This document shows positions 266 to 41,719 of a DNA stretch of 64,000 nt, one piece after another. The first letter of the stretch is position 1. Each line of letters starts with the position of its first letter. The position numbers and the translations under genes were made by a program. The stretch comes from Pecten maximus (lineage: Eukaryota): assembly GCF_902652985.1 (NCBI RefSeq), contig NC_047021.1, positions 16,678,001-16,742,000 on the forward strand, in the 5' to 3' direction. The notes under the pieces were generated by a model. That model was given only the letters and a program-made list of their open reading frames with translations, had not been told where the DNA came from and did not search any database.

Positions 266-335
266 CTGAATGGCACATGGAAACACTGAGCCACTGTATG
301 TAACACCAAGCTCGAAGTAGTAAGATCCTCTTCAT
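266..335 (-). CDS. First coding (signal peptide) exon of a further paralogue of the lectin-mucin-TM family; gene continues beyond the left edge
   Basis: ATG at 335 reads MKRILLLRAWCYIQWLSVSMCHS-G, then G|GTAAAT phase-1 donor at 266/265. Closely resembles exon 1 at 13091-13166 (MDWRILLRAWCGIQFLCGTVYLSQS-G); both ATGs are preceded by GACAAC. Confidence 0.7.
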
Positions 336-2032
336 GTTGTCTGCCACGAAATGAAGGTTTTCTGACCAGGTACCGGGCGAAAAAAGTTTGTTAACAATGC
401 ATGTAATCTGGTCCATTGTTAGTACATGTGTGTTCCTACCTCATAATTATGTTAGTTGTTATGAAGACAAAAACCATTCCGTCCCACTGTCAGTGGTGGC
501 AGTTCACGTACAGTGTGGGTATATGATCAAGTTCTTAACAAATATTTATTTTTGGTTGGTCACGGTCCTGAAAAAAATATCCTATTGTATTCTGATATAT
601 AGCTATAAAAGGAGCATTTGATGTTTGTGTATTGAGTGTTCAACGAAACGAATGCAAATCATATTGCCTTTTTTTTTCTTTTGTATTGAATGTTCAATAT
701 ATATCCCTGCGGACTCGAAGTAATTTAGTAAGTATGTACATTATATATACTTTTCTTTTGGCTTTAAATTTACTCGTAAAAGGTATTGTTTTGTATATAA
801 TTCAGATCAATCGTGTATAAACGAGATGGCGTCATTATGGATAAAAGAGCGAAAATAACAGCATTACTTAGACACCCATGGCAATTAAATAGGTAATGTG
901 TCAAGTTGCATAGATTTTTTTATATTTTTTTAGGGAAAATTTGATAAATGAGAAAATAAAGTGTATGCGTACGTTATATAAGCAATTTACAAGGTTGCAC
1001 ACCATGCCATTTAAAACAAAATAGTTTACTTAATCTTGGGAAGTGCGATTTTCATACTCTTTAATGCTCTTTTCGCTAGGATCAAGAATCCATTGCCTAT
1101 TTGGCTATAGACATACATATGTATAAACTGTATATATGTTTTCAATATCGTTTATGACGTATTCTCAAAAGCATATCTTAATGTACAGCAGCACGTATCC
1201 AAAACAACACTAGATGAGAGAAAAAGAAGGCAAACATTAACATAGAGAACACTTTTTTTTATATTTTAAGACACTGACCATGTATTCTATTTATCATGCA
1301 ACATGCATCAAAAATAAGCATTTTTAAGTGAAAAAGTATCAACAATGCCCTAATATTCGCCTTTTTAATTTTATTTCACTTGGAAATAGGTCAGTCGAAT
1401 TGACGCAGATGCTTAGATTCTAAAATACAGCTGTTTTCCGGCACTGCCGTAAACAGTACACATATATTGTGTGTGTATTCTGTGATGCAGTGCCAGTTGC
1501 AGGATAAAACGTATTAATTTACTAGTATGAGTAAGGTCTTGGCAACCTGATGTTACATAAACTGAACACCTTATATAGCCATATGGCCTGATACAAACCA
1601 ATTCAATGCCGAATGAGGAATCCAATTTTTGTTTTATTCATCTCCGATTATTCGATGATGCAGTGTATTCTTGACTTATTGAGCATAAATATTCATTGGT
1701 TACTACTAGGTATGTGAAAACAAAAGACAAGTCACCAATATTAAAACAGAATTATCTACACGATAGTGTGTACCTTACTGCTTTTCATGCAAAGGCCATT
1801 ACAATAGAAAGATTTCTAGGAAAACATCATAAACATAATTAATATCGTCACCGATTCTTCTATTTGCTGCCATGCGATTGGTCATAACGCTGTAACACTA
1901 TGCTCTGTTTATCTTTTTCAGGGTCTGCAGCGTTTTACTATAGTGTACACACCGACATTATTGTGGTGTGATATCAAGTATCTAAAACACTTTGCTTTGC
2001 CTTTTATAACCGGGTGAACGACATGCATGAAA

Positions 2033-5000
2033 TCAACAAAATGTTTTCAACGCCACAAAGAGTCTCGGTAGGTCTAACAGGAAAACTCCGCCGAATGCCA
2101 CTGTCAGAAATCCTATGCCGAGGTATCCTACGTAGGCGGAGGTTGGACGAGGGTCGCTAGCACTGGTTCTCTTACGTATCGTCGACGATAAGTTCTCCTC
2201 GTTAACTTTGGTTTCCTTCTTCAGAATATCAATCTTTTTCTGTAGTTCCTCGTGGGTAATATTCACGACAGGGTTAACACAGCAATGACAGCATGGTGAG
2301 ATGCTGGAGGCAGTGGTTACGTCAGTGGTGACGCCAAAAGTTCTGTCAGTGTTGACGTCAGTATTCTGGTTTGTGGTGACGTCAGTAGTTCTTTTATTGG
2401 TGACTTCAATGTTCCGGTGAGTGTTGACATCGGTAGTCTGGTCAGGAATAGCTTCAGTTTCCAGGTTGGCGGTAGGATCAGCAGAGAGACCACCTGTGTT
2501 TTTTTTTGTAAAGCAAACAGAAATCAGTAATACTAATAATGCGAACGTATAGGAATAGGTAGAAGACTTAGTGGTAGCATGAGCAATTAATTAGACACTA
2601 CAGTTAATCATGTTGTTAAAGGCAGTTTGCCTAATTCGACTATCAAACTCGACAACAGTGATTTATATAAGGCAATAAAACTTGATACATCAACGGTGTG
2701 TAATCTTACATGGTTAGCTAAAGACTACTCTGTTTTGTATGAGTAAGCAAACATATGCATAAACAAAATTTATCAGAGTTAAGCTTTTTAGTGACGTGTG
2801 TATAATGAACGCTGACCTATATTTTACATAGCGGATGTCTACAATGAAGTAGAAGACGCTGAACCTTTCCGAATACCTGGTCCTTTTTTCTTGTTGTTGT
2901 CGAATATACATTGTCTCATTGAAAATTTATAGTGTTGGTTCGTATTTGCCATCGTTAAACAATTTTCAAAATATTGTTACAAGTCGTGTCTTGTATTTAA
3001 TGAAACATCTCTAATCGAGTGAAATAAATGCAACATTCAACAACCACTCTTTTTGCAACCCCTATTATAGTTTATATGTATATGTACCGGTTTGGTATGG
3101 CGTTGAACATAGTGCATAAGCCTCCGTTGAGCAAATACAATCATGGAATTTCCAGTTGTAGGTGAAGATTGTAATACATTCCCCATTGTCTGTGTTGGGC
3201 TGGCCGAAATCCCAAGGTATCCAGGATTGTACAATATCGGTTCCTTGCATCACAGTATCAGTCTGTGCCGACTTCTGGTATCCAACATAAAGGAAGTTCC
3301 AACTGGAAAGCAATCGCACCATGTTATAAAACAATCTTCCAATCTGTTAGTTTTATGGGATACCACTAATATATATGTATTCGTTGAACAGCAAAAATTC
3401 AACAATTCAATAACAGCACACTTTACTTATTAACATTACACAACACATTAACGAAACACGACATTCCTTGACATTAAACAACATAATAATGACACACTCC
3501 ACTCCTTAACATTCAACGACACAATAACGACATAGTTCACTTCTCACGGATAAACATAGTGAGGTAATACACACAACCTCACGGCACCCAGACAAACATA
3601 GTGACGTAATACACACAACCTCACGGTACCCAGACAAACATAGTGAGGTAATACACACAACCTCACGGCACCCAGACAAACATAGTGACGTAATACACAC
3701 AACCTCATGACACCCTGACAAACATAGTGAGGTAATACACACAACATCACGTCACCCAGACAAACAGTGACGTAATACACACAACCTCATGGCACCCAGA
3801 CAAGCATAGTGAGGTAAAACACACAACCTCACGGTACCCAGACAAACATAGTGAGGTAATACACACAACATCACGGTACCCAGACAAACATATTGACGTA
3901 ATACACACAACCTCACGGCACCCTGACAAACATAGTGAGGTAATACATACAATTTCACGGCAAACAGACAAGCATAGTGATGTAATAGGCACAACCTCAC
4001 GGCACCCAGACAAACATAGTGAGGTAATACACACAACATCACGACACCCAAACAAATATAGTGAGGTAATACACACAACTTCACGGCACCCAGACAAACA
4101 TAGTGAGGTAATACACAAAACTTCACGGTACCCAGACAAATATTTAAGCATTGAACTGCTTTCATTTGGAAGTTATGGGCTGATGAATGCCAACTTGACA
4201 AAGGCAATTTTAATGAAGCGCGCTAGTGCTTCATGTTGAATTTGCCTTTGTCCAGTTGACATTCATCAGCCCATAACTTCCAAATGAAAGCAGTTTAATG
4301 CTTATATTTACATTTGACGACTATCTTTAAAGACTTTATCCAGGGATTTTGCTCCTACTATGAATGAACAAATTATTATCGTCAAAGACGGAACAGCCTT
4401 TTCAAAAACAATCTTTCGTTATCGCCGACGTGACAATTATGACGTTACTATAATAATGACGTCATAATAAAGATTTGGAAGTTATGGACTCGTAACCTTC
4501 AAGCAAGCTTGGTAAGGTTATGCAGTGGGGCTGCAGTGTAAATGTAAATATAGTGTGGTAATACACACAACCTCACGTCACCCAAACAAATATAGTGACG
4601 TAATACACACAACATCACGGCACCCAGACAAACATAGTGAGGTAATACACACAACCTCACGGCACCCAGACAAACATAGTGACGTAATACACACAACATC
4701 ACGGTACCCTGACAAACATGGTGAGGTAAAACACACAACCTCACGGTACCCAGACAACCATAGTGACGTAATACACACAACTTCACGGCACCCAGACAAA
4801 CATAATGAGGTAATACACACAATTTCACGGCAAACAGACAAGCATAGTGATGTAATAGGCACAACCTCACGGCACCCTGACAAACATAGTGACGTAATAC
4901 ACACAACCTCACGGCACCCAGACAAACATAATGAGGTAATACACACAACCTCACGGCACCCTGACAAACATAGTTAGGTAATACACACAACATCACGACA

Positions 5001-8000
5001 CCCAAACAAATATAGTGAGGTAATACACACAACTTCACGGCACCCAGACAAACATAGTGAGGTAATACACACAAATTCACGGTACCCAGACAAACATAGT
5101 GACGTAATACACACAACCTCACGGCACCCTGACAAACATAGTGACGTAATACACACAACCTCACGGTACCCAGACAAACATAGTGAGGTAATACACACAA
5201 CCTCACGGCACCCAGACAAACATAGTGACGTAATACACACAACCTCATGACACCCTGACAAACATAGTGAGGTAATACACACAACATCACGTCACCCAGA
5301 CAAACATAGTGACGTAATATACACAACCTCATGGCACCCAGACAAGCATAGTGAGGTAAAACACACAACCTCACGGTACCCAGACAAACATAGTGAGGTA
5401 ATACACACAACCTCACGGTACCCAGACAAACATATTGACGTAATACACACAACCTCACGGCACCCTGACAAACATAGTGAGGTAATACACACAACTTCAT
5501 GGCACCCTGACAAACATAGTGAGGTAATACACACAATTTCACGGCACCCAGACAAGCATAGTGATGTAATACGCACAACCTCACGGCACCCAGACAAACA
5601 TAGTGAGGTAATACACACAACATCACGTCACCCAGACAAACATAGTGAGGTAATACACACAACCTCACGGCACCCTGACAAACATAGTGAGGTAATACAC
5701 ACAACCTCACGGCACCCAGGCAAACATAGTGACGTAATACACACAACCTCATGGCACCCAGACAAACATAGTGAGGTAATACACACAACCTCACGGTACC
5801 CAGACAAACATAGTGATGTAATACGCACAACCTCACGGTACCCAGACAAGCATAGTGAGGTAATACACACAACCTCACGGCACCCAGACAAACATAGTGA
5901 GGTAATACACACAACCTCACGGCACCCAGACAAACAGAGTGAGGTAATACACACAACCACATGGCACCCAGGTAAACATAGTGACGTAATACACACAACC
6001 TCACGGCATCCTGACAACCATAGTGACGTAATACACACAACTTCACGGCACCCAGACAAACATAATGAGGTAATACATACAATTTCACGGCAAACAGACA
6101 AGCATAGTGATGTAATAGGCACAACCTCACGGCACCCAGACAAACATAGTGAGGTAATACACACAACATCACGACACCCAAACAAATATAGTGAGGTAAT
6201 ACACACAACTTCACGGCACCCAGACAAACATAGTGAGGTAATACACAAAACTTCACGGTACCCAGACAAATATTTAAGCATTGAACTGCTTTCATTTGGA
6301 AGTTATGGGCTGATGAATGCCAACTTGACAAAGGCAATTTTAATGAAGCGCGCTAGTGCTTCATGTTGAATTTGCCTTTGTCCAGTTGACATTCATCAGC
6401 CCATAACTTCCAAATGAAAGCAGTTTAATGCTTATATTTACATTTGACGACTATCTTTAAAGACTTTATCCAGGGATTTTGCTCCTACTATGAATGAACA
6501 AATTATTATCGTCAAAGACGGAACAGCCTTTTCAAAAACCATCTTTCGTTATCGCCGACGTGACAATTATGACGTTACTATAATAATGACGTCATAATAA
6601 AGATTTGGAAGTTATGGACTCGTAACCTTCAAGCAAGCTTGGTAAGGTTATGCAGTGGGGCTGCAGTGTAAATGTAAATATAGTGTGGTAATACACACAA
6701 CCTCACGTCACCCAAACAAATATAGTGACGTAATACACACAACATCACGGCACCCAGACAAACATAGTGAGGTAATACACACAACCTCACGGCACCCAGA
6801 CAAACATAGTGACGTAATACACACAACATCACGGTACCCTGACAAACATGGTGAGGTAAAACACACAACCTCACGGTACCCAGACAACCATAGTGACGTA
6901 ATACACACAACTTCACGGCACCCAGACAAACATAATGAGGTAATACACACAATTTCACGGCAAACAGACAAGCATAGTGATGTAATAGGCACAACCTCAC
7001 GGCACCCTGACAAACATAGTGACGTAATACACACAACCTCACGGCACCCAGACAAACATAATGAGGTAATACACACAACCTCACGGCACCCTGACAAACA
7101 TAGTTAGGTAATACACACAACATCACGACACCCAAACAAATATAGTGAGGTAATACACACAACTTCACGGCACCCAGACAAACATAGTGAGGTAATACAC
7201 ACAAATTCACGGTACCCAGACAAACATAGTGACGTAATACACACAACCTCACGGCACCCTGACAAACATATTGACGTAATACACACAACCTCACGGCACC
7301 CTGACAAACATAGTTAGGTAATGCACACAACCTCACGGTACACATACAAACATAGCTAGGTAATGCACACAACCTCGCGGCACCTTGACAAACATAGTGA
7401 CGTAATACACACAACCTCATGGCACCCAGACAAACATAGTTAGGTAATGCACACAACCTCACGGTACACATACAAACATAGTTAGGTAATGCACATAACC
7501 TCGCGGCACCTTGACAAACATAGTGACGTAATACACACAACCTCACGGTACCCAGACAAACATAGTGAGGTAATACACACAACCTCACGGTACCCAGACA
7601 AACATAGTGACGTAATACACACAACCTCACGACACCCTGACAAACATGGTGAGGTAATACACACAACCTCACGGCACCCTGACAAACATAGTGAGGTAAT
7701 ACACACAACCTCACGGCACCCAGACAAACATAGTTAGGTAATACACACAACCTCACGGTACCCAGACAAACATAGTGAGGTAATAAACACAACCTCACGG
7801 TACCCTGACAAACATAGTGAGGTAATACACTCAACCTCACGACACCCAGACAAACATAGTGTGGTAATACACACAACCTCACGGCACCCAGACAAACATA
7901 GTTAGGTAATACACACAACCTCACGGCACCCAGGCAAACATAGTGAGGTAATACACACAACCTCCCGGTACCCAGACAAATATAGTGAGGTAATACACAC

Positions 8001-11000
8001 AACCTCACGGCACCCAGACAAATATAGTGAGGTAATACACACAACCTCACGGTACCCAGGCAAACATAGTGACGTAATACACACAACCTCACGACACCCT
8101 GACAAACATGGTGAGGTAATACACACAACCTCACGGCACCCTGACAAACATAGTGAGGTAATACACACAACCTCACGGCACCCTGACAAACATAGTGACG
8201 TAATACACACAACCTCACGGCACCCAGACAAACATAATGAGGTAATACACACAACCTCACGGCACCCTGACAAACATAGTTAGGTAATACACACAACATC
8301 ACGACACCCAAACAAATATAGTGAGGTAATACACACAACTTCACGGCACCCAGACAAACATAGTGAGGTAATACACACAAATTCACGGTACCCAGACAAA
8401 CATAGTGACGTAATACACACAACCTCACGGCACCCTGACAAACATATTGACGTAATACACACAACCTCACGGCACCCTGACAAACATAGTTAGGTAATGC
8501 ACACAACCTCACGGTACACATACAAACATAGCTAGGTAATGCACACAACCTCGCGGCACCTTGACAAACATAGTGACGTAATACACACAACCTCATGGCA
8601 CCCAGACAAACATAGTTAGGTAATGCACACAACCTCACGGTACACATACAAACATAGTTAGGTAATGCACATAACCTCGCGGCACCTTGACAAACATAGT
8701 GACGTAATACACACAACCTCACGGTACCCAGACAAACATAGTGAGGTAATACACACAACCTCACGGTACCCAGACAAACATAGTGACGTAATACACACAA
8801 CCTCACGACACCCTGACAAACATGGTGAGGTAATACACACAACCTCACGGCACCCTGACAAACATAGTGAGGTAATACACACAACCTCACGGCACCCAGA
8901 CAAACATAGTTAGGTAATACACACAACCTCACGGTACCCAGACAAACATAGTGAGGTAATAAACACAACCTCACGGTACCCTGACAAACATAGTGAGGTA
9001 ATACACTCAACCTCACGACACCCAGACAAACATAGTGTGGTAATACACACAACCTCACGGCACCCAGACAAACATAGTTAGGTAATACACACAACCTCAC
9101 GGCACCCAGGCAAACATAGTGAGGTAATACACACAACCTCCCGGTACCCAGACAAATATAGTGAGGTAATACACACAACCTCACGGCACCCAGACAAATA
9201 TAGTGAGGTAATACACACAACCTCACGGTACCCAGGCAAACATAGTGACGTAATACACACAACCTCACGACACCCTGACAAACATGGTGAGGTAATACAC
9301 ACAACCTCACGGCACCCTGACAAACATAGTGAGGTAATACACACAACCTCACGACACCCTGACAAACATGGTGAGGTAATACACACAACCTCACGACACC
9401 CAGACAAACATGGTGAGGTAATACACACAACCTCACGGCACCCTGACAAACATAGTGAGGTAATACACACAACCTCACGGCACCCAGACAAACATGGTGA
9501 GGTAATACACACAACCTCACGGTACCCAGGCAAACATGGTTAGGTAATACACACAACCTCACGGTACCCAGACCAACTTCACGACACCCACACAAACATA
9601 GTGAGGTAATACACACAACCTCACGGCACCCAGACAAACATAGTGAGGTAATACACACAACCTCACGGCACCCAGACAAACATAGTGACGTAATACACGC
9701 AACCTCACGGTACCCAGACAAACATAGTGAGGTAATACACACAACCTCACGGTCACCCAGACAAACATAGTGAGGTAATACACACAACCTCACGGCACCC
9801 AGACAAACATAGTGAGGTACACATGTAATACACACAACCTCACGGTACCCAGACAAACATAGTGACGTAATACACCCAACCTCACGGTACCCAGACAAAC
9901 ATGGTGAGGTAAAACACACAACCTCACGGTACCAAGACAAACATGGTGAGGTAATACACACAACATCACGGCACCCAGACAAACAGAGTGAGGTAATACA
10001 CACAACCACATGGCACCCAGGTAAACATAGTGACGTAATACACACAACCTCACGGCATCTTGACAACCATAGTGACGTAATACACACAACTTCACGGCAC
10101 CCAGACAAACATAATGAGGTAATACATACAATTTCACGGCAAACAGACAAGCATAGTGATGTAATAGGCACAACCTCACGGTACCCAGACAAACATAGTG
10201 AGGTAATACACACAACCTCACGGCACCCTGACAAACATAGTGTGGTAATACACACAACATCACGACACCCAAACAAATATAGTGAGGTAATACACACAAC
10301 TTCACGGCACCCAGACAAACATAGTGAGGTAATACACAAAACTTCACGGTACCCAGACAAATATTTAAGCATTGAACTTTTTTCATTTGGAAGTGATGGG
10401 CTGATGAATGCCAACTTGACAAAGGCAATTTTAATGAAGCGCGCTAGTGCTTCATGTTGAATTTGCCTTTGTCCAGTTGACATTCATCAGCCCATAACTT
10501 CCAAATGAAAGCAGTTTAATGCTTATATTTACATTTGACGACTATCTTTAAAGACTTTATCCAGGGATTTTGCTCCTACTATGAATGAACAAATTATTAT
10601 CGTCAAAGACGGAACAGCCTTTTCAAAAACCATCTTTCGTTATCGCCGACGTGACAATTATGACGTTACTATAATAATGACGTCATAATAAAGATTTGGA
10701 AGTTATGGACTCGTAACCTTCAAGCAAGCTTGGTAAGGTTATGCAGTGGGGCTGCAGTGTAAATGTAAATATAGTGTGGTAATACACACAACCTCACGTC
10801 ACCCAAACAAATATAGTGACGTAATACACACAACATCACGGCACCCTGACAAACATAGTGAGGTAAAACACACAACCTCACGGTACCCAGACAACCATAG
10901 TGACGTAATACACACAACTTCACGGCACCCAGACAAACATAATGAGGTAATACACACAATTTCACGGCAAACAGACAAGCATAGTGATGTAATAGGCACA

Positions 11001-13166
11001 ACCTCACGGCACACAGACAAACATAGTGAGGTAATACACACAACCTCACGGCACCCTGACAAACATAGTGTGGTAATACACACAACATCACGACACCCAG
11101 GCAAACATAGTGAGGTAATACACACAACCTCACGGCACCCAGACAAACATAGTGAGGTAAAACACACAACCTCACGGTACCCAGACAACCATAGTGAGGT
11201 AATACACACAACCTCACGGCATCCAGACAAACATAGTGAGGTAATACACACAACCTCACGGCACCCAGACAAAGATAGTGAGGTAATACACAGAACCTCA
11301 CAACACCCAAACAAATATAGTGAGGTAATACACACAACTTCACGGCACCCAGACAAACATAGTGAGGTAATACACACAAATTCACGGTACCCAGACAAAC
11401 ATAGTGACGTAATACACACAACCTCACGGCACCCTGACAAACATATTGACGTAATACACACAACCTCACGGCACCCTGACAAACATAGTTAGGTAATGCA
11501 CACAACCTCACGGTACACATACAAACATAGCTAGGTAATGCACACAACCTCGCGGCACCTTGACAAACATAGTGACGTAATACACACAACCTCACGGCAC
11601 CCAGACAAACATAGTGACGTAATACACACAACCTCACGGCACCCAGACAAACATAGTTAGGTAATGCACACAACCTCACGGTACACATACAAACATAGTT
11701 AGGTAATGCACACAACCTCGCGGCACCCTGACAAACATAGTGACGTAATACACACTACCTCACGGCATCCTGACAAACATGGTGAGGTAAGGTATCATTT
11801 GATTTTTTTCACAAATCGTTTGATTGTGTTGTCAACCTCGTGCATTTCGCAAAGGGTATATCCAAATTCCAACAATTAAGTGAACTGAGGATGAACTTTC
11901 AAACATAAATAACCATTCATGCTTATATAGCAAAATAATCACAAATACGTCTATGTTAGGACATTTTAAACTTAAATCTAACCGAATTCTACGTATGTTT
12001 GGGTTCTTAAGGATATATTACAAATGTAAGCACTAGTGTTTAAAGTGTTATACAGAATGTAAACCTGCGAACCAATAATATTGTACGATAACAGGTGAAA
12101 TCATAGCTTAGTACCACTGTTAGTAGGGACAAAACAATTTCAATACACTCTCGAACTTAACATGTAAATATTTTATATCGGTTACTTTGATTAAAAGATA
12201 TGAGTGACCTATCATGTCAGGGTTTTTTTTGTTTAATTATTATTTCAACATGAGGTACTTGTATCATAAATCTAAACTTGAACCTCTATATTCCGTAAAT
12301 AGCGGGGAATTGTTGTAATTACACCAGGTAAATACTTAATGAACCAATTGATATTATGAGATTAAACGAATATGTATCATCACATAAAACTTACTATCCA
12401 GGAAGTTGTTGTCTTATGAATGCTGAGATGTTCGAAATGGCCTCTTCCTTTGGGAAATACGCAAGTGTACCATCACTTTCCTGGCACGCGTCTTCACTCG
12501 ATGAGGCGTCTTGCCGTCTATCTATAACCCAGTAGCAGATTTGGGTTTCGCTAACGTCGGTTAAACATTCACACAGGGGAATAACCGCTATAAAATAATT
12601 AGAAATACAACATGATGACACATTTAAAACTGTTAAATTTCAGTCCACTATTCATTTGTCTATTTTAAAACTGGTTTCATAATTTTTCTTTATTTTACTG
12701 AATTAATTCATAGTTGTGTAAAAAAAGTCACACTTTCCAGTTTGGGATCACTTGGCATTTGTCTTGTAAGCTTGATCGTTTTCCACATGAACGTTTGTCA
12801 AATTCATACTAGTCCATTTTGTCATTTTAGGTATTGTTTTCAATTTGGCTGGAATCTATCATTTACTGGTAGTTTTAATCCACTGTCAGAAAAAAGAGTA
12901 AAATTAATAGGATTGTCATGAAATGTCGTTTTGAAGATGGCTATACAAATGATAAACGCACACTTAGAACGGTGAACCTTCTGTGAAAATAATTGGTAAT
13001 CAATCTGATATATTGTTCCATTTGTTTTACTAGAAATGAATTATTGTAATAGACAGACTATATATACAATATAAAACAAGGTGCGTTTACCTGACTGAGA
13101 CAGATACACGGTACCACAGAGGAATTGTATACCACACCATGCCCGAAGCAGTATCCTCCAGTCCAT
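2033..13166 (-). CDS. Gene A: type I membrane C-type lectin with short Thr-rich stalk and conserved juxtamembrane module (~314 aa, 4 exons)
   Basis: Exons 13166-13091 (signal peptide), 12587-12395 (CTLD N-half, ICYW..AC..DGTLA), 3302-3088 (CTLD C-half, LYVGY, WDFGQPN, ECI..FHDCIC..ALC), 2493-2033 (stalk, CCHCC, helix, LSSTIRKRTSASDPRP, TM). All introns GT-AG, phases 1,2,1; 945 nt open frame. Confidence 0.85.
4142..4551. mobile_element. ~408-bp fold-back/MITE-like insert, copy 1
   Basis: Interrupts the 42-bp unit at AAATAT. First ~165 bp is an imperfect palindrome centred on GCGCTAGTGC. The remainder is bounded by TATATTTACATTT...AAATGTAAATATA. Confidence 0.7.
6272..6681. mobile_element. ~408-bp fold-back insert, copy 2
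   Basis: Near-identical to copy 1 at offset 2130, with the same flanking repeat variants. Confidence 0.7.
10363..10772. mobile_element. ~408-bp fold-back insert, copy 3
   Basis: Near-identical to copy 1 at offset 6221, with a few substitutions in the left arm. Confidence 0.7.
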
Positions 13167-14215: not shown

Positions 14216-14403
14216 TTGTCAAGGGAGACATTAGGAAGAAGAAAGTTGTTCAGAAAGAAGAGAAAAGATAAGATCCCAAATTTAGTCGCCACTTACGATC
14301 ATGCAATGGGGGCAGCAGGTACAATTCTTACGCCCTACCTGCAGGGCAGCGACACATTGATAACAACTAGGATTCGATAACAAGTAATGAGTGATTTTCT
14401 GAA

Positions 14404-22575: not shown

Positions 22576-25500
22576 ATGCTATGGAACTTTCTGACCAGTA
22601 TATTATTACTGGCGAATTACCCAGGTAAGATTATGGTCTTTGTATAGATTTCAACATCTTTTGTGTTTGTTGCAGTTGTTCTTATACTATATTACAGAGT
22701 AGAAAAAATATTTTCAAATGAATGTCAAAATAGCGTATAAATCACGGACATACTGAATTAGCAAAATTTTTAATCGTTGACAAATATGTCGTTATTGTGT
22801 ATAATTCGTATCCCTGTACGTATATACATTACAGTAAAGGTATTCATATCATCTAACAGACGATTTGTCACTATGAACAGTGTACCACTCGACCATTTCT
22901 CTACCAATGAAATGTTCGATAACAGAACGTGGATGTGGCGCAATGGTATCAGCTGCGGGTATTACTGGCTAGGCGAATAGGTGTCGAAGGTCGTGAGTTC
23001 GAGGCTGGGTCAGGGCACATGTCATAAAATTGTCTTCCTTCGTCAGTTGTGACTGTCAGTTGTGTCAATATGTGTCTTGGTTCGTAAACCAGATATATCT
23101 TTTATTTTCTAGCATACTGTATTTTCTCTTCAGGGGGATATTCACAATGTCAAAGCGGTGCCGAGTTGTACTACCTTTTCCCACACGGAGATATTTGTTA
23201 CTGGATACTGAGTTTATATTCGCCGAGAAATGCGGCAGACAGTGAAACTGGCTGTAGGAGTGAGAACGGAGAGCTAGCTTACATCCCCAACATATATGCT
23301 CTCATCACAGTGATGCAACTATTATTGAATAATAATGCGAACGTCAGGTTAGTGACACTTAGTCCATTTAAAAACTGTTGTACAATATATTTAAGGAGGA
23401 ACATCTGTCTGATGACATGTTGTATGATTTCCAGTCTTTATTATATCAATGCCAAGTGAAGCTTTCAACGTATCAATTACGCTATGGGGTAGGAAGCAAG
23501 TGCATGATATCTTTATTTAGACTTTTGTTTTAGTATTTCCTTACTTTGATATATGATTTGTTTCCTGATTTTAAACTGATGATTATATTGTGACAAAAAG
23601 GTAAGTATTCCATTTTTGTCAAAAATGATATAAAATATATAAAAACAGATTTCTAGATTCTTCATATGTTAGATAAAGACATTGAGAACTAGGCGTGTAG
23701 AAAAATAATTTGTACGCATGACAGATGACGTCTAGTGTGGCCGATAAAAACCGATCATATTTTTTTCAGAATATAAGTACTGTGTTGTCAGAGATTCGTT
23801 ACCAATTTAAACAAAGCTTTATTAAGGTAAACTTGTTAATATTAACAACTAATATACCGCCAAAGCATGTGACACATCTTTTTTAACATGGCTGTGATCG
23901 GAATTTTTTATAATTTTTTATAATGTTGAACGCAAGAACACAATTAGTTGATAGTGAATACACGTGTAGATTGAATAAATTTCTTTTCCATTTCCGCATT
24001 TTCAGCGGCTGGTATGCTTACTTGGGATATAGTCGGGTAACCTCTTCCACTACATTATTGGAAATACAAAACAGTGGCGTTTACCAAACGTGGATACCAT
24101 GGGACCAAGTGATGGGCCAACCATTACAAAGCAGCTTGGGATGTATAGCACTTCATGGCACCTCGGGGCTTTGGCATGACATGCACTGTGCTAATAACAT
24201 AAGGGCAATATGCTCAACGCCTTATCACACAGGTATGCCAGTAGTTTTTAAATAAGCTACATTTCAAATAAAAATGACATACATTTCAATCAGATTTTTT
24301 AAAATTAGTTATGTCATTGTGAAAAACTTAAACACACTGTCTTAGCTAGTAATTTCATTGTGAAACACTTTAACATACTGTCTTAACTAGTAATGCCATT
24401 GCGAAACACTTGAACACATTGTCGTAACAAGTTATATAATTGTGGAACACTTGGATACAATGTCTTAACTAGGTATGTCATTGTGAAACACTTGAACATA
24501 CTGTCTTAATTTTTATGTGACTTGGAGGTGAAACAATTTATTTAGCAGCCATCAACAAAACAATGAAGGGTAACAGGTAAAATTATTTGAAAGGACTATA
24601 AGCATTCCAGTTACGACAAGATACCAATTTTTAATCGATTCTATTAGTATATCATCTTGTTATTCTGTGATATTGTCGTATTGGATTCCATGTTCATTAT
24701 TATTACTACAGATACAACACAGGCCCCAACGATCACCTCTACAACGACACGGGTCCCAACAACAACCACTACAACCACCCAAGAACCGACAACCACTACA
24801 ACAACAACTCAGGAACCCATAACAACAACTACTACAACAACTCAGGAACCCACAACAACAACCACTACAACAACTCAGGAACCCACAACAACAACCACTA
24901 CAACAACTCAGGAACCCACAACAACAACCACTACAACAACTCAGGAACCCACAGCAACAACCACTACAACAACTCAGGAACCCACAACAACAACCACTAC
25001 AACAACTCAGGAACCCACAACAACCACTACAACAACTCAGGAACCCACAACAACCACTACAACAACTCAGGAATCCACAACTACTACATCAACAACTCAG
25101 GAACCGACAACCACTACAACAACAACTCGGGAACCGACGACCACTACAACAACTCAGGAACCCACAACCACTACAACTCAACCACCAACAACAACGGCAA
25201 CGACCAAGGAACCGAAAACAACAACGACGACGACTACTGATGTACCGACAACAACAACGACAACAACCGATGAACCCACCACAACTACAACTACAACGCA
25301 GGATCTAACAACCAGTAGAATAACCATTGAAGAATTATCTACATCGAGCCACACGGATTGCGTGTGCCCATGCGATCATAGTCCTCATACAGAGTTTTTC
25401 TCAACCGTTAATATGACTGAGGAGCTACAGGCGAAATTGGACAGTTTAAAGGAGGAAACAAAAGTTGATGAGGAGACTTTATCGTCAACTATCAGAAAGA

Positions 25501-25637
25501 GGACCAGTGCCCACGATCCCCGTCCGTCCTCGACCTATGTTGGATACTTGGGCATAGCACTTCTCTCCTTTATATTTGGTGGCCTGATCCTTGCAGATCT
25601 GTTAAGTGTGATCATCACCTTAAAACTCATTTTATAA
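22576..25637 (+). CDS. Gene C: type I membrane C-type lectin-mucin (~471 aa, 4 exons)
   Basis: Exons 22576-22624 (MLWNFLTSILLLANYP-G), 23134-23347 (ICYW..GC..NGELA), 24006-24232 (AYLGY, WDQVMGQPL, GCIAL..LWHDMHC..AIC), 24712-25637 (QEPT7-8 mucin, CVCPC, LSSTIRKRTSAHDPRPSS, TM). GT-AG introns, phases 1,2,1; 1416 nt open. Confidence 0.88.
22800..23050 (+). repeat. Dispersed repeat with tRNA-like A/B boxes (inverted copy at ~57960-58220)
   Basis: GTGGATGTGGCGCAATGGTAT..GTTCGA..CAGGGCAC..TTGTCTTC aligns with the reverse complement of 57960-58220. Confidence 0.65.
24310..24512. repeat. Degenerate ~41-42-bp tandem repeat in intron 3 of gene C
   Basis: About 5 copies of TCATTGTGAAACACTTGAACATACTGTCTTAACTAG. 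Confidence 0.75.
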
Positions 25638-34391: not shown

Positions 34392-37300
34392 ATGGACACA
34401 GATTCATTTACCATACTTATTGCATTATACCTACAGGGAGGCACTTTTGGAAGTCACATAGGTATTTTTTCTTAAAGTAGTCTTATTTTTCAGTTTGTTT
34501 AACCGAGATGTTTAATTATTGTTTTAAATATATATTTTCACATTGATGCGGAGACAACTATGATCAGCCATTGATTCTATTACATTTCCAATTCTGCAGA
34601 TGTTATACTATGATGATATAGGTGTTTACTGTTAAAAACGGTCTGGTTTTACCGAGAAGTACTCCTATTATATATTCACAGGTATCGATTACCTCGCTGT
34701 ATTATCGATTTGATATTACTGTTTCATGTTAGACCTTTTTCAATATATATGAAATAATCGTATTTGAAATTATTTTCAATGCAAATGTCCCACTAGTATT
34801 TCCGGTTTTTCGTTATGTTCAATGCAAATATACCATTTGCATTTTCGGTTTGGCGTTATGTGAATGCAAATGTTGCATTAGTATTTCCGGTTCGGCGTTA
34901 TGTATATTGGAAATGTCACAGTAGTATTTCCGGTTTGGCTTCGTTCACTGTAAATGTAATTTTCTATTTTCCAGTTTGGTGTCATTCACTTTGTAAATAT
35001 ACATCAGGTTCGGTGGTTCCATGCTATTGTACAATATTTGTTGTCTATGTGTTTGCTACTAGAACCAAACATATTGCTGATTTGTATGTTTGTCATTCCT
35101 TCAGGATGCCCAAGCGAAGGAACAGTATTGACAGATAGCATATACAACGAGACATGCTTCTGGATAGTGCAGACTAGACAACAAATCCAAGTTGGGGAAG
35201 ATAGGTGTGCTACAAATGGAGGACACTTGGCAGTTGTTTCCAGTGAATCCATTGCGATCATGCTTTACTCCTTCATAACGAACACAGGTGTTTCGTATGT
35301 ATTTATTGATGACTATCTTCACAATGTACATTGTATTCAGAATCATAGTGATTTTGTCACAACAAAGATTTCTTTAATTTTAGCGAGGCTCAATTTGGCG
35401 ATTTGGCGGCGCCGTATATAGATCGCAAAAATTTAATCCGCCAAATTTTAACACCGCCAATTAAGATGAAGCGAAAATTTCATCTTCATATTTGATAACT
35501 CCTCTAATGCTTCGATACTCCGAGATTAACTATTAGTGCGTATTGTTGGTTGTTGCCTGACAACTTTAGACAATCTAGGACGATTTTATTTTAATTTAGG
35601 TATGATGTCTTCCTATCCAATTAGTCATGTACATATAATTCAATATCTTTCCTGTAGTAGTCAATGATTTACCTGCATTCCATATATTCGTATAGACTCG
35701 CATGAGGTTTTTTTCCGGCCCGCTTGACGACAATTTAAAAATATGATTTTTTTTAAAAGAAAGCCTCTACAATTAAATTAATATTAGCAGCTTATCTATC
35801 CGTATATGTATCATACAATAGACGACCGGCAATATTATACAGTTTATTAAACACGCTTCATTATGCCATTTATTCTCTTTGTCTGTTGCATGTACATGTA
35901 GCTTATTTGTACGTATTCGTTAAAACGCTTGGTATTACGATCGCGAAAATGTTCCGCTCTCCCCACCCGTTCATTCTAACGACTTGTCCGACAAGGAGTC
36001 TCTCCATGAGTTTGGTATTGATGGCTTTATTGCCGTAGAGATCAAAGCAACCTGTTGGTGATAAGAAAAAAGTCGAGATATCTTTTAAAGACGCATACTC
36101 CCAAATAACCTAAACTTTTACATACACATGTACTAATGACAATCCAAGATGCTCATTCACGCTCTCCTAACATTAAAATGACCATTAGACTAGACACTTG
36201 ACCGGGGGAATCCTGGCGACTTCAGTGTATGAAAATACTTTGCGGTATTTATTTTTTATCGCGAGATTTGCCATGAAGCCTAGAACGAGGCTACAAGAAC
36301 GTTCACTACACATAAACTGCACACTAATCAATATAAACAAACATACAACTAAATACCTGATTTTGAAATATAGCAATATGCATACAACAAAACATCGATA
36401 AAATTGAGATCGGTGAAGTGGACACAATGTTCGAGGAATACGGTAAAACCTAACCAGCAATCCAATAGACGTCCGGAAAAATCGGAATTCGAATCTATTT
36501 CTATTTCCTCTCCTGATGAGTTCCAACGAATCGATTCTTTTCCCAGGGAAATCCTGAGGTTTTGCCGATTCTAGTCCTTTTTAAGTTTTTTTTTTTTTGG
36601 CAGAATCTGTCTGCGTTTCTAGCTGGCCCACGCTTTCGGCGTTTTGTCATTTTGTGTTTTGTTGACCGTTTCATTGAGGGACTAATTTGCATTGAAACCT
36701 GGTCCACGGACCCAGTTATTATTTTATGGAATTTTCCGTATAGTTTCATAAAGACACATTTCCTTCCAGTTTTTGATTCGCGATAACTTGTTAGGTATAT
36801 ATATGAAGTCTGAAAACTGTAAAGAGGTCAAAATGTAATCATTTATATATATTTCATTTGGGAAAGAAAAAAAACGTGTGCCACACAGCATGCATTTCCG
36901 TTAGTTTAGTTTATTTCATTGCCAATATACAGCAAAAGGATTGAGCACAAGTTATATGAACATTACAGACGCCCGTTGCTAATAATATAATTAAACATAT
37001 GTATACATCATAAGATGGTTAAATAGTGATAATCATGTACAATACTAGTTTAATTGGATAAGAAAATTAAAGGGGATAGATAATGATATATCCATGAACC
37101 GAAGGAAAAATAACAAGGACATAGTCGTCAAGATCCCCCGCCCATGCAAAAATTGTATTACATGAAATTAAAGTGGGCAACATTCATAAAAACATGAAAA
37201 ACATGACATTTAGCATTTAGAATCATTACATTTATATTCATGTTCAGGCAGCAAGTTCCTGTGAAAGTAATTAACATAATTAGTAACAATTAAATAAGAT

Positions 37301-40300
37301 ATTATACTGTACAGTGAACTATCAAAATGGGCTAATCATGCTTGTATTCTCCCTTTCTTCCTACTAGATAGATCTGACTTAATATGGTTGGAAGTGTATC
37401 GACAGATGACTGTTTTGACATGAACCATACAATTAAGTTTTTCATTGAGGCTCAGATGGTTGATACAGTGCATTCCTCTTTATATCATGTTGTATTTGTC
37501 AGACAAAAACATGATATTAACAGAAATGTGAGCAATCAGCTAATCAGGTCACAGCAGCCTCATTAAATATGCGCGGAATATGCCGATGATCGAACTTGAA
37601 CGAGGGGTTCAGGTTATAAGTGTACCAAGCAAGTTTCATCAAAATTCAATCATTCCTTCAAAAGATATCGTCCGAAAAGCAATCAGCCAATCAGGTCACA
37701 GCAGCCTCATTAAATATGCGCGGAATATGCCGATGATCGAACTTGAGTGAAGGGTTCAGGTTATAAGTGTACCAAGCAAGTTTCATCAAAAGCCAATCAT
37801 TCCTTCAAAAGATATCGTCCGGAAAGCGAATCCAGACGGACGGAAGGACCCCATTTGTATATCGTACTTCGTTGGGCGGGGGATAATAAATAATATTTGT
37901 TACTATTTAGGTAGGTTAGGCAGCGGCATATTGACAATAAACATCAATAACAATCTTGAAAACAAATCCCTAATGGGTGCACGACAGTGAAAAACATTCA
38001 GTCTGCGATTGTTTAGTCTATGAATTAAAAAATAATAAGGACATTAAAGTTTGGAAAAACTTATTATTACCATAGGTTTGTCATATGCTTGTCCCTGGCT
38101 AAATAAAGAAGTAAGGTCGTTTCCCGTTTACCTTGACCTAGGTTTAGGCCACGATACAGGTAATGAATTACGTGACACCGGTGATTCCCACAGCACCAAA
38201 ATACACCGCCATGGTCCATTGGCGCGCTGTGTGATATGAGCGGATTATGTAGTCAATCAATAACATATGAAATAAAGTTTATTGACATACCAGATAGGAA
38301 TTTTACACTATCATGTTTAATGTACATTTAACGTTAAAAATATTTTTTCAAATACGACCAAGAAAAAATGAATGGTGTTAAGAAAAACAAAAACAAATAT
38401 GAAAACATACATCTTGGTAGGTGATTCGAACTCCGAACCTACGGTTGCCTAAGCGTTGCGGTGCGCCTTTGGTTCTACCATATAAATCAAAATATTTTAT
38501 CAACTACGCTTTTTCGCTTTTTCGATGTTAGGATTTTAATTGTCTTTTACTACATAGAATAAAATTATGCATTGTAAAAATTGATCTTCCGATGCACTCT
38601 ATGTCAAATAAAGATTTGAATGCAGGAAAAAAACCCACGAACGTTGCAAATAGCTCGACTCATACCATTATTGTAGGAACATCACACGCGACATGTGGCT
38701 GTTTGATACGTTTTTTGTTTCTTTCTCGTTAATTAAGCTCGTGTCATTGTATCTTATGTATCTAACTTGAGTATTATTAACGCCGTATCCAACAACCACT
38801 TGTTTCCGTGCAACCTCTATTTCATCTGCTATTAAGTAGTTCTTCGGGAAGTGATAGCTCATTCGGTAGAACTTCGGACAGCAGCTTTAGGGGAATTCGA
38901 GGTTCAATCCCTACCCGAAGAGATTTATGTTTCTCAGAGAGCTAAAAACACGAACAGTTCTGTGATGTAGTGGCTGTTTCATGCGGCAAGATATTTCACC
39001 CCAAATGATCTTGTTGACATGCAACGGGCCTTCCGTATTGTGCCCAAGGAGATAGTCAACAGCTGTTACAAGGACACTCCGCCTCCAAATTACACTGGCT
39101 CTTTACTGAGCAATAAACGCAACAAAATACGCAAACTTATAAGTATTCAACGAATACAACCAAGTTTCATAATGCATAAAAAAAGTAAAAAATACGATAA
39201 GTATAAGAGTGAATTAACATCGTAATGATATGCTAATTAAAAGGCTACATTGTTTTATCGTATATTTTTAAACTTATAAATACTGTCTTGTGAATACGTT
39301 ACACATTTAAATTATGCTGATATATATTCTAATATTTAACCTAGTGAATTGTTAAAGTTGAAAATTTTAATGATGTAGGCATTAATTAAATACAAAGCCT
39401 ATTTTTTGTTTAATCAGATCAAACTGGCTATATATGGGATACAATGAATACAATAACAAAGTCACAGTGAGACGCACAGGGGAACAACAGTTGTGGACTT
39501 ATTGGGACAATAGAGAACCAAACGACAGAGTCTCTCCTGAACCATGTATAGCTATCAAGGTGGCCAACGGCAAATGGCATGATATTCCATGCACGTGGAA
39601 TGTATGTGCGTTATGCTCGAAACATCTCCATACAGGTTTGTCTTACTTGTTAACAAATCTTATGCATCTAAATCTAGCAGGTTTTCTTACCTTTTAAAAA
39701 AAATAATATGCATTCATTACTAGATCAATGTTAATGCACACTTGTATCAATTGAAGGCTCATTTTCCAAACATTGTTTCGATTGATTTACAGTAGGAATA
39801 AATAAAAAAAACAGTCTAAAGTTGTTAAATGTTTATAGATCTGTTTATGTAGGCTGTGATTTCTGGTCTTGGTTTTCTATGGTAAACATGACGGTAGCAC
39901 TAATTCACCACTGCACTATTCTGTTGCAGTTCTGTAAAATTTAGATTATATCATTTAAGATGACTGACGCTTTGCATATCCTAACCATTTTTTTAAAATA
40001 TGTTTGGTAGTAGTATTTAACGTAGAGTGTTCTAACTAGACGATTCAAACAAACAATTGATCTTAGAAATATATATCTATATGTCATCGGTAAAATAGTC
40101 AATGTATTTTCTATCTATTGACGTAAATAAGTTTTGGAATTTAAGTCAAAGTGCTTTTGATCCGGCTTAATGACAAAAACTTTTTTTTTTTAAGTGATTA
40201 TCAAACCGAACGATTAGATTCATTGTTGAACAAAAGAAATAACATTCTCTTCCTACATATTATTTAGTTGACTTTGTAGAATTTCAGCAAGCCATGCATG

Positions 40301-41719
40301 TTCATTTAAAGATGTAATTAATTATTGTGTCAGTTAAACATAAAGAAAAGCACAAATTGTAAATATTTTTTAAATACTGTTCCCATAGATACAACGACTG
40401 AGGAACTAACAACTGAAAAAACAACTCAGAAGCCTTATAATACAACCCCTCCCATTCCGTCAGGAATACCAACCACTTCACCTCAGGAACCGACGACCAA
40501 TAAAACAACCCAGGCACCGACAATTACTACAACAATTTGGGAACCGACATCCATCAATGCAACAACACAGGCACATACAACAATCACTGTAACTCAGGAA
40601 CCCTTAACATCAACCACTAAAACAACTCAGGAACCCACAACAACCACAACACCAACTCATGAACAAATAACCACAACCATTACAACAACTCAGGAACCCA
40701 CAACAACAGCCACTACAACAACTCAGGAACCCACAACAACAACCACTACAACAACTCAGGAACCCATAACAACAACCACTACAACAACTCAGGAACCCAC
40801 AACAACCACTACAACAACTCAGGAACCCACAACAACAACCACTACAACAACTCAGGAACCCATAACAACAACCACTACAACAACTCAGGAACCCACAACA
40901 ACCACTACAACAACTCAGGAACCCACAACAACAACCACTACAACAACTCAGGAACCCACAACAACCGCTACAACAACTCAGGAACCCATAACAACAACCA
41001 CTACAACAACTCAGGAACCCATAACAACAACCACTACAACAACTCAGGAACCCACAACAACCACTACAACAACTAAGGAACCCACAACAACCACTACAAC
41101 AACTCAGGAACCCACAGCAACAACCACTACCTTAACTCATGAACCAATAACCACAACCACTACAACAACTCAGGAACCCATAACAACAACCACTACAACA
41201 ATCACTACTACTCAGGAATCCATAACCACTTCGACAAGCACGACAACATCAAAGGAACTAACAACAGCCAGTACAACAATCCAGGAATTGACAACCATCG
41301 TTGCAGCATCTCAAGAAATAACAACTTCAAAAAAGCAGAAGCCATCAACCACTACTTCAACAATTCGGGAACTAGCAATAACTACAACAGCTGGGGCTCA
41401 AACAGCATCCACTACAACAACTATTGAGAACATAACAACACCAATCCTCATCGCCTGCTTTTGTCCGTGTAGACAGAGTAACTACACGGTCAGTGAGCTT
41501 GAAGCCAAACTAGAGAATTTAAAGGAGCAGACAAGAATTGACGAAGAAACGTTATCGTCTACGATAAGAAAGAGGACTTGTGCCGACGATCCTCGTCCCT
41601 CTGTGGCCTATGTAGGATACATTGGAATAGGGTTTCTAACTTTCATATCCTTTGGAATTTTACTGCCGGACATTTTTCAAATGATACAAACACTAGAACG
41701 ACTTCGTGAAACAAATTAA
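34392..41719 (+). CDS. Gene D: type I membrane C-type lectin-mucin with EPN/WHD site and long stalk (~602 aa, 4 exons)
   Basis: Exons 34392-34461 (MDTDSFTILIALYLQGGTFGSHI-G), 35105-35294 (TCFW..RC..GGHLA), 39418-39635 (WLYMGY, YWDNREPND, PCIAI..KWHDIPC..ALC), 40389-41719 (mucin, CFCPC, LSSTIRKRTCADDPRPS, TM). Phases 1,2,1; 1809 nt open. Confidence 0.88.
34778..34995. repeat. Degenerate ~43-44-bp tandem repeat in intron 1 of gene D
   Basis: About 5 copies of AATGCAAATGT..TAGTATTTCCGGTTTGGCGTTATG. Confidence 0.7.
36400..36865 (+). repeat. Dispersed repeat (second copy at ~48140-48610)
   Basis: Shared CAGCAATCCAATA..GACGTCCGG.AAAATCGGAAT, TTTTTGGCAGAATC.GTCTGCGTTT and CAGTTATTATTT.ATGG(G)AATT motifs in the same orientation. 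Confidence 0.75.
37111..37890 (+). mobile_element. Non-autonomous Helentron-associated (pearl/HINE-like) element
   Basis: Starts AACAAGG..ATCCCCCGCCC and ends GGGCGGGGGATAATAA (inverted pair). Two tandem 147-bp cores (37531, 37678) followed by (GACG/GGAC)n. Confidence 0.65.

What the first reader, a model, noticed from the sequence alone, without database searches (positions are those of the whole stretch)
266..41719. Tandem cluster of at least five paralogous lectin-mucin membrane receptors hidden from the ORF track
Seen: genes A (-), C (+) and D (+) splice cleanly with identical exon logic (signal | CTLD-N | CTLD-C | stalk+anchor; phases 1-2-1). Gene B lacks the lectin, and a fifth signal exon sits at the left edge. 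Lectin heads are very divergent while the membrane anchor is strongly conserved. Knowledge: CTLD-on-mucin-stalk architecture is typical of surface recognition and adhesion receptors. Inference: a modular, diversifying recognition system (variable head, variable-length stalk, constant anchor) for mucosal immunity, particle selection or gamete recognition. I know of no named family for it.
Basis: partly seen in the sequence, partly recalled or inferred. Interest (0 to 1): 0.82.

Follow-up and report, generated by a model that had tools for sequence, protein, structure and literature searches.

The report
Scallop lectin-mucin membrane protein cluster
Six neighbouring king-scallop genes encode surface proteins with a sugar-binding-type head, a sugar-coated stalk of varying length and a membrane anchor; the genes are real, but the "constant anchor" is an unnamed cassette that molluscs attach to thousands of other surface proteins.

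Summary
The window is Pecten maximus chromosome piece C7:16678001-16742000. All nine predicted junctions are GT..AG with phases 1-2-1. Spliced RNA contigs and the RefSeq protein confirm gene C's three junctions exactly. The cluster has six genes, not five: two lie wholly or partly left of the window. The heads are long-form C-type lectin-like domains: they pass the Pfam cut-off, and a confident model matches solved C-type lectin domains. The stalks are Thr/Pro-rich, about 25 to 350 residues. Among paralogues the heads are 19-41% identical and the anchors 57-63%.

Three corrections:
- Against the Argopecten orthologue, head (71-72%) and anchor (69%) are equally conserved, and changes fall mostly at third codon positions. 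The heads diverged long ago and are now constrained, not rapidly diversifying.
- The anchor is not special to this cluster. A profile finds 2,743 protein clusters; every named one sampled is molluscan, and the heads include lectin, IgGFc-binding, ephrin-receptor-like, Ig, WSC, PAN and EGF domains. Pfam has no model for it. This scan already noted the cassette on other DNA of this genome (s1-786418).
- Four of the six genes are already in RefSeq under automatic names.

The tail after the membrane helix is only 11-18 residues with no tyrosine, so any signalling needs a partner. Function is untested.

The parts
266..335 (-). Gene E, exon 1 (signal peptide MKRILLLRAWCYIQWLSVSMCHS, phase 1). Its other exons lie left of the window: L033 8920-8728, 7480-7260 and 6798-6431.
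   Evidence: The donor of intron 3 is GC, not GT (AG|GCACGT). There is no RNA evidence and no database protein for this gene.
2033..2493 (-). Gene A, exon 4: short Thr/Asp/Asn-rich stalk plus anchor cassette, stop codon included
   Evidence: part of RefSeq P0008
3088..3302 (-). Gene A, exon 3: second half of the lectin domain (motifs QPN / FHD)
   Evidence: Lectin_C positions 42-106, E 0.005; junctions
3552..11790 (.). 42-bp satellite, about 196 copies with three spacers. It fills intron 2 of gene A and produces stop-free ORFs of up to 1,284 aa on the ORF track.
12395..12587 (-). Gene A, exon 2: first half of the lectin domain; 56% identical to the matching exon of gene E
   Evidence: It is absent from the RefSeq model P0008, which starts inside exon 3.
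13091..13166 (-). Gene A, exon 1: signal peptide MDWRILLRAWCGIQFLCGTVYLSQS, phase 1
19057..19409 (-). Gene B, coding part of the last exon: short stalk plus anchor cassette, stop codon included. The 3' UTR runs on to about 18450.
   Evidence: RNA contigs; RefSeq P0023
19913..20082 (-). Gene B, first exon seen in RNA. It encodes MEILEYY...MCHHT, a hydrophobic 34-residue N-terminus with no lectin.
   Evidence: joint 19409/19913 in three runs. No significant likeness to the lectin exons.
22576..22624 (+). Gene C, exon 1: signal peptide MLWNFLTSILLLANYP, phase 1
   Evidence: P0001
23134..23347 (+). Gene C, exon 2: first half of the lectin domain
   Evidence: spliced contigs; P0001
24006..24232 (+). 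Gene C, exon 3: second half of the lectin domain (motifs QPL / WHD)
24712..25637 (+). Gene C, exon 4: about 210-residue stalk of 33-bp (TTTTTTQEP-type) repeats plus anchor cassette, stop codon included
34392..34461 (+). Gene D, exon 1: signal peptide MDTDSFTILIALYLQGGTFGSHI, phase 1
   Evidence: no RNA evidence or database protein
35105..35294 (+). Gene D, exon 2: first half of the lectin domain
39418..39635 (+). Gene D, exon 3: second half of the lectin domain (motifs EPN / WHD)
   Evidence: Lectin_C 23.2 bits from this exon alone, cut-off 22.6
40389..41719 (+). Gene D, exon 4: about 350-residue stalk with the same 33-bp repeat family as gene C, plus anchor cassette, stop codon included

Best explanation
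This is a tandem cluster of six king-scallop genes spanning about 60 kb: L1, E, A and B on the minus strand, C and D on the plus strand. They encode type I membrane glycoproteins. Five have a signal peptide, one long-form (six-cysteine) C-type lectin-like domain split over two exons, a disordered Thr/Ser/Pro-rich stalk of about 28 to 350 residues, and a C-terminal cassette of about 80 residues. The cassette reads CxCxC, an N-x-T sequon, a 14-16-residue amphipathic helix, the motif LSSxxRKxTSAxDxRPS, a glycine-bearing membrane helix, an invariant Asp, and a tail of 11-18 residues. Gene B keeps only the stalk and cassette. All of this is shown by sequence, RNA contigs, database proteins and models. 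Inferred working model: the proteins sit on an epithelial or haemocyte surface and hold lectin-like heads at different heights, set by stalk length. There they bind glycans or other ligands on mucus, particles, microbes or neighbouring cells. The tail is too short and lacks any tyrosine motif, so they cannot signal alone. Either they act as passive tethers or adhesins, or the conserved juxtamembrane and membrane part couples them to a shared partner. The cluster is one lectin-headed branch of a very large unnamed family defined by that cassette and seen in all three molluscan classes sampled.
For: Gene structure. RNA: spliced contigs for all three gene C junctions and the gene B intron in three runs of one study. 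Database proteins with identical joins: P0001, P0004, P0023. Lectin head: Lectin_C above the Pfam cut-off (30.7 and 33.9 bits against 22.6); six invariant cysteines; the L1 head models at pLDDT 90-97 and matches Endo180 CRD2, tetranectin, lithostathine and others at target TM-score 0.78-0.85. Stalk: pLDDT below 50 and 33-bp repeats. Cassette: 32 invariant columns across the six genes plus the Argopecten orthologue; helices at residues 77-92, 100-107 and 114-150 of gene B, pLDDT up to 95. Breadth: at least 115 copies in this genome; 2,743 representative proteins at E<=1e-3, with the match almost always at the C-terminus; heads of many kinds; all 28 named proteins of 30 sampled are molluscan, covering bivalves, gastropods and a chiton. 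Conserved layout in Argopecten irradians. Purifying selection: head 71-72% and anchor 69% identical between orthologues; differences at codon positions 1/2/3 are 19/14/35 of 74 codons (second lectin exon) and 19/6/33 of 77 (anchor).
Against: No ligand, tissue or cell type is known. The runs are coded and all come from one study. The sugar-site motifs are non-canonical: only D has EPN, the others have QPN, QPL, QPE or QPA, and none has WND (WHD, FHD, WKV instead). Calcium-dependent sugar binding may therefore be weak, altered or absent. Genes A (9.1-kb satellite-filled intron), D and E (GC donor) have no RNA support here. D and E were not found among database proteins, so some members could be silent or decaying. 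Decay does occur in this family: the second plus-strand gene in Argopecten has two stop codons in its lectin exon. Membrane insertion and surface location are predicted, not shown.
Confidence: 0.7

Rival explanations
1. These are primarily membrane-tethered mucins, that is glycocalyx or barrier and lubrication proteins of gill or mantle epithelium. The head is a structural or protein-binding C-type lectin-like domain rather than a sugar receptor. The conserved juxtamembrane motif is a shedding site that releases the ectodomain into mucus.
For: Long PTS repeat stalks in C and D. Non-canonical sugar-site motifs. A basic RKR/RKK stretch next to the membrane in most members. Headless members such as gene B and many 100-160-aa relatives exist, so the stalk plus cassette may work without a head. 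Automatic database names all follow the stalk: mucin-1-like, Sgs-3-like.
Against: Four of the six stalks are short (about 25-65 residues), too short for a barrier mucin. The heads are as conserved between orthologues as the anchor, so the head carries a selected function. No SEA domain is present. The dibasic pair is not conserved family-wide: RKL, RSK and RTL variants occur.
Confidence: 0.2
2. These are signalling pattern-recognition receptors of haemocytes, like the oyster receptors CgCLec-HTM and CgCLec-TM1. They would trigger Syk/ERK and cytokine expression after binding microbes.
For: Same broad build: a C-type lectin head with a C-terminal membrane span, which a 2025 review calls unusual in bivalves (PMC12842671). 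QPx/WHD motif combinations also occur in CgCLec-HTM (QPS/WHD, same review).
Against: The oyster receptors signal through a hemITAM in a cytoplasmic tail (PMC13027682). Here only 11-18 residues follow the invariant Asp and none is a tyrosine. Direct signalling of that kind is excluded; signalling through a partner is not.
Confidence: 0.07
3. Several members (A, D, E) are not working genes but decaying duplicates or mis-joined exons. Only C, L1 and B would be real.
For: No RNA evidence here for A, D or E. D and E are missing from the protein databases searched. RefSeq truncates A. E needs a GC donor. A pseudogenised neighbour exists in Argopecten.
Against: All exons of A, D and E are open and in phase, and they keep the six cysteines and all 32 invariant cassette columns. 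A and E are 56% identical in the exon that RefSeq omits. D's lectin exon alone passes the Pfam cut-off.
Confidence: 0.15

Closest known systems
Oyster transmembrane C-type lectin receptors CgCLec-HTM and CgCLec-TM1 (Crassostrea gigas)
   Same: Bivalve proteins with a single C-type lectin head and a membrane span. CgCLec-HTM has its membrane span at the C-terminus and QPS/WHD motifs (PMC12842671), close to the QPx/WHD seen here.
   Different: They carry a cytoplasmic hemITAM that recruits Syk (PMC13027682). The scallop proteins have an 11-18-residue tail without tyrosine. No mucin stalk is reported for the oyster receptors.
Vertebrate group XIV C-type lectin-like proteins (thrombomodulin, CD93, CD248/endosialin, CLEC14A); comparison from general knowledge
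   Same: Type I membrane proteins with an N-terminal C-type lectin-like domain held on a Ser/Thr-rich mucin-like stalk; non-canonical sugar sites.
   Different: They have sushi and/or EGF domains between head and stalk, and a real cytoplasmic tail. Pfam finds only Lectin_C here. There is no sequence relation outside the lectin domain.
Membrane-tethered mucins (MUC1 type); comparison from general knowledge
   Same: PTS tandem-repeat stalk of variable length, a single membrane span and a conserved module next to the membrane.
   Different: MUC1-type mucins have a SEA domain of about 120 residues and a signalling tail. Here the juxtamembrane module is a helical cassette of about 45 residues, with a lectin head at the tip.
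Chitin-binding mucins with the same anchor cassette, noted earlier in this scan (s1-786418, same genome)
   Same: Tandem scallop genes with head, graded stalk and the same unnamed cassette.
   Different: The head is a chitin-binding-type domain instead of a C-type lectin-like domain, and the locus is different.

Membership tests
C-type lectin-like domain superfamily (Pfam PF00059) | Profile match above the curated cut-off | tested here: met
   P0001 (gene C) 30.7 bits and P0004 (L1) 33.9 bits against a cut-off of 22.6. Gene D's exon 3 alone scores 23.2. A and E were tested only exon by exon: A's exon 3 has E 0.005; E was not scanned.
C-type lectin-like domain superfamily (Pfam PF00059) | Conserved cysteine framework: four core cysteines plus two N-terminal ones in the long form | tested here: met
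   Three invariant Cys in the first lectin exon and three in the second, across five scallop genes and the Argopecten orthologue
C-type lectin-like domain superfamily (Pfam PF00059) | The fold itself | tested here: met
   The L1 model has pLDDT 90-97 over residues 21-150. Foldseek top hits are all C-type lectin domains, target TM-score 0.78-0.85, E about 1e-8.
Canonical calcium-dependent carbohydrate-recognition domain | EPN or QPD tripeptide at calcium site 2 | tested here: inconclusive
   D has EPN. A has QPN, C QPL, E QPE and L1 QPA. QPN variants are reported to bind sugars in other bivalve lectins (PMC12842671).
Canonical calcium-dependent carbohydrate-recognition domain | WND motif | tested here: not met
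   WHD in C and D, FHD in A and E, WKV in L1
hemITAM-type bivalve lectin receptors (CgCLec-HTM / TM1) | Cytoplasmic tail with a YxxL motif | tested here: not met
   Only 11-18 residues follow the invariant Asp, with no tyrosine, in all six genes
Vertebrate group XIV (thrombomodulin/CD93 type) and selectins | EGF and/or sushi domains after the lectin head | tested here: not met
   Pfam finds Lectin_C only
SEA-type tethered mucins | PTS tandem repeats | tested here: met
   33-bp repeats, 11-14 copies in C and 19 in D; Thr-rich translations
SEA-type tethered mucins | SEA domain next to the membrane | tested here: not met
   No Pfam hit in any stalk-plus-anchor exon at E<=1 apart from chance-level ones
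Unnamed molluscan anchor-cassette family | C-terminal CxCxC, NxT, helix, LSSxxRKxTSAxDxRxS, Gly-bearing membrane helix and Asp | tested here: met
   All six genes; 22 other copies in this genome; 58 short relatives; profile search with 2,743 hits

The most novel reading that the evidence does not exclude
The conserved cassette is an undescribed coupling module found across molluscs. Through its invariant extracellular Arg, glycine-bearing membrane helix and membrane-edge Asp, it would dock one common partner (an adaptor, a sheddase or a sorting factor). Thousands of surface proteins with unrelated heads (lectin, IgGFc-binding, ephrin-receptor-like, Ig, WSC, PAN, EGF) would then feed into a single pathway. 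That would be a molluscan counterpart of tail-less immune receptors pairing with shared signalling adaptors, and this lectin cluster would be one set of inputs tuned by stalk length.
Probability: 0.15. Interest if true: 0.8.

Novelty: new variant of a known kind. Interest (0 to 1): 0.45.

Why it matters
Bivalves have very large C-type lectin repertoires, yet a recent review treats membrane-bound forms with a C-terminal anchor as rare oddities (PMC12842671). This cluster shows such forms are a regular, conserved gene family. In this cluster the heads have stayed fixed between two scallop species, while stalk length differs more than ten-fold among the paralogues. The wider point is the anchor. 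A short module with no Pfam model is shared by thousands of molluscan surface proteins, and database names for them are driven by the low-complexity stalk ("salivary glue protein", "mucin-1-like", "A-agglutinin anchorage subunit-like"). Defining that module would clean up annotation across mollusc genomes. It would also give a concrete handle (the invariant Arg, Gly and Asp, and the CxCxC motif) for asking how these animals connect surface recognition to a cell response.

Tried and rejected
1. Self-association of the cassette: complex prediction with three copies of gene C residues 377-471 gave 'no answer' (score 0.02). This is neither support nor evidence against, so the idea of a disulphide-locked oligomerising neck stays a guess.
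2. Gene B's first exon as a decayed lectin exon: it has the same position and phase, and a W..C..C pattern is visible by eye. But BLASTP and a DNA alignment with four lectin exons show no significant likeness, so the idea was dropped.
3. Pfam on every anchor exon and the ESM Atlas restricted to named clusters found no named family. The open Atlas search found only unnamed molluscan clusters.
4. Literature: four searches found no description of this cassette or of this gene cluster. The original CgCLec-HTM paper is not held.
5. Database proteins for gene D and gene E (expected) were not found.
6. Formal dN/dS was not run. The scripting machine was lost, so I counted differences by codon position by hand from two pairwise DNA alignments instead.
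7. Joined spliced models of A, D and E were not built or searched. Those genes were searched exon by exon, by reference. Full-length searches used only the database's own records for C, L1 and B.
8. Earlier notes near this place: none.
9. The 12-letter loose end at 20082 in one contig recurs inside the same exon (19986), so it was treated as an assembly artefact, not as a further exon.
Full report
**Where we are.** The window is G000:C7:16678001-16742000 of a 918-Mb assembly in 3,983 contigs. Database proteins encoded here are labelled Pecten maximus, the king scallop.

**Checking the observation.**
Exon lengths give intron phases 1-2-1 in A, C and D.
- The signal exons translate to short hydrophobic leaders.
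- Searched exon by exon, the second lectin exon of A, C and D each matches Pfam Lectin_C positions 42-107 (E 0.005, 0.0007, 0.0001). The first-half exons are too short to score alone.
Contigs lacking introns can only come from RNA.
- The RefSeq protein P0001 (471 aa, "salivary glue protein Sgs-3-like") has the same joins.

**Gene B.** The same contigs show an intron at 19410-19912 (GT..AG on the minus strand) and an upstream exon from 19913 to at least 20082. RefSeq P0023 (151 aa) has exactly this structure. The start of the 137-aa ORF on the ORF track is intron sequence. The real N-terminus is a hydrophobic 34-residue stretch from the upstream exon. I suspected that exon was a decayed lectin exon, but BLASTP and a DNA alignment show no significant likeness, so I dropped the idea.

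**Size of the cluster.** A six-frame search of the genome with gene C's anchor finds six copies within 60 kb on C7. I fetched the left flank and mapped two further minus-strand genes.
- Gene E owns the "fifth signal exon" (window 335-266). Its other exons are at L033 8920-8728, 7480-7260 and 6798-6431, and intron 3 has a GC donor.
- Gene L1 equals RefSeq P0004 (294 aa, "macrophage mannose receptor 1-like"). It has four exons and phases 1-2-1.

The order is L1(-), E(-), A(-), B(-) | C(+), D(+). RefSeq's model of A (P0008, 231 aa) starts inside exon 3. It misses exons 1-2, which lie beyond a 9.1-kb intron filled by an 8.2-kb array of a 42-bp satellite. Those two exons are open, and the lectin one is 56% identical to the matching exon of E. 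No database protein was found for D or E. I did not build or search joined models of A, D or E. They were handled exon by exon, by reference.

**The head.** Whole proteins pass the Lectin_C cut-off: 30.7 bits for C and 33.9 for L1, against 22.6. Six cysteines are invariant, which is the long-form pattern. An AlphaFold model of L1 has pLDDT 90-97 over the head. Its best Foldseek matches are all solved C-type lectin domains: Endo180 CRD2, tetranectin, lithostathine, type II antifreeze protein and MGL, at target TM-score 0.78-0.85.

By alignment to DCIR2, the sugar-site motifs are as follows:

| Gene | EPN-site motif | WND-site motif |
|---|---|---|
| D | EPN | WHD |
| A | QPN | FHD |
| C | QPL | WHD |
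| E | QPE | FHD |
| L1 | QPA | WKV |

Such variants are common in bivalve lectins, and some still bind sugars (PMC12842671). Binding here is unproven.

**The stalk.** It models as disordered (pLDDT below 50) and is rich in Thr, Ser and Pro. Length runs from about 25 residues (B, E) through about 50-65 (L1, A) to about 210 (C) and about 350 (D). C and D share a 33-bp repeat family.

**Head versus anchor.**

| Module | Paralogues vs gene C | Argopecten orthologue vs gene C |
|---|---|---|
| First lectin exon | 19-41% | 71% |
| Second lectin exon | 33-39% | 72% |
| Anchor | 57-63% | 69% |

Between orthologues, head and anchor are equally conserved.

The scripting machine was lost, so I could not run dN/dS. 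Counting by hand from two gap-free alignments gives differences at codon positions 1/2/3 of 19/14/35 in 74 codons of the second lectin exon, and 19/6/33 in 77 codons of the anchor. Both show the third-position excess expected under purifying selection. The head is somewhat freer at second positions. The heads therefore diverged early and have since been held.

The Argopecten locus has the same layout: two minus-strand anchors, then two plus-strand genes. Its second plus-strand gene has two stop codons in the lectin exon, a sign of birth-and-death turnover.

**The anchor is a general cassette.**
- Within the cluster, 32 columns are invariant.
- Twenty-two other copies from this genome align to the same pattern: CxCxC, NxT, a helix, LSSxxRKxTSAxDxRxS, a membrane helix with conserved glycines, and an Asp. 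The genome holds at least 115 copies.
- A profile of these, searched against 1.84 billion representative proteins, finds 2,743 at E<=1e-3 and 1,748 at E<=1e-10. The match almost always sits at the very C-terminus.
- Of 61 longer hits, 20 carry Lectin_C, 8 IgGFc_binding, 5 Ephrin_rec_like, 3-4 Ig domains, 3 WSC, 3 PAN, 2 EGF and 1 Sushi. Many hits are 100-160 aa and headless, like B.
- Of 30 hits looked up, all 28 that carry a name are molluscan: scallops, oysters, mussels, pearl oyster, a unionid, Mactra, Mya, three gastropods and a chiton. They are "uncharacterized" or named after the stalk.
- Pfam has no model and the Atlas has no named cluster. Four literature searches found no description.
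I reached the breadth result from my own searches.

**How it probably works.**
- Shown: a leader, a lectin-fold head, a disordered glycosylatable stalk, two short helices, and a long hydrophobic helix that models at pLDDT up to 95. Only 11-18 residues, none a tyrosine, follow the invariant Asp.
- Inferred: type I insertion, surface display, and ligand capture at a distance set by the stalk.
- Direct signalling of the kind described for the oyster hemITAM receptors (PMC13027682) is excluded by the missing tail.
- Residue-level conservation inside and just outside the membrane suggests contacts with itself or with a partner. The one complex prediction gave no answer and is not evidence either way.
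- Passive tether or adhesin, shed mucosal lectin, and partner-coupled receptor all remain open. I rank them in that order for this cluster.

**Verdict.** The genes form a lectin-headed branch of a large, unnamed molluscan family of anchored surface proteins. Four of the six are already in public annotation under uninformative names. Novelty is moderate. The cassette is more interesting than the cluster itself, and this scan had already noted it once.

Noticed in passing
window 3552-11790: An 8.2-kb array of a 42-bp satellite (about 196 copies, three spacers of about 400 bp, internal large duplications) fills intron 2 of gene A. It has no stop codons in several frames, so it dominates the ORF track with false ORFs of up to 1,284 aa.
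   Followed up: partly
window 30976-33749; 41762-42592; 17439-18191; 14405-14665: Further tandem arrays lie between the genes: 34-bp units x81, 21-bp x40 directly after gene D's stop codon, 25-bp x30 and 26-bp x10. The cluster is unusually rich in minisatellites.
   Followed up: no
window 28512-29034: Remnant of a mariner-type transposase (Pfam Transposase_1, E 2e-16) between genes C and D.
   Followed up: partly
window about 49200-55200: A GC-rich block (52% against about 35% around it) with long ORFs, one carrying a reverse transcriptase domain (RVT_1, E 1e-20). It is a retroelement insertion to the right of the cluster. Observed only.
   Followed up: partly
L035:17532-17756 (Argopecten irradians): The second plus-strand lectin gene of the syntenic Argopecten cluster has two in-frame stop codons in its second lectin exon. 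It is either a pseudogene or an assembly error.
   Followed up: no
protein P0009 (Saccostrea echinata, 437 aa): The database model contains two lectin heads and two cassette matches in a row. It is probably two tandem genes fused by the annotator, which suggests that oysters also keep lectin-stalk-cassette genes in tandem.
   Followed up: no
window 19671-20012, run X5: Contigs of a second study lie unspliced across gene B's intron-exon border. This is DNA or pre-mRNA and says nothing about expression.
   Followed up: no
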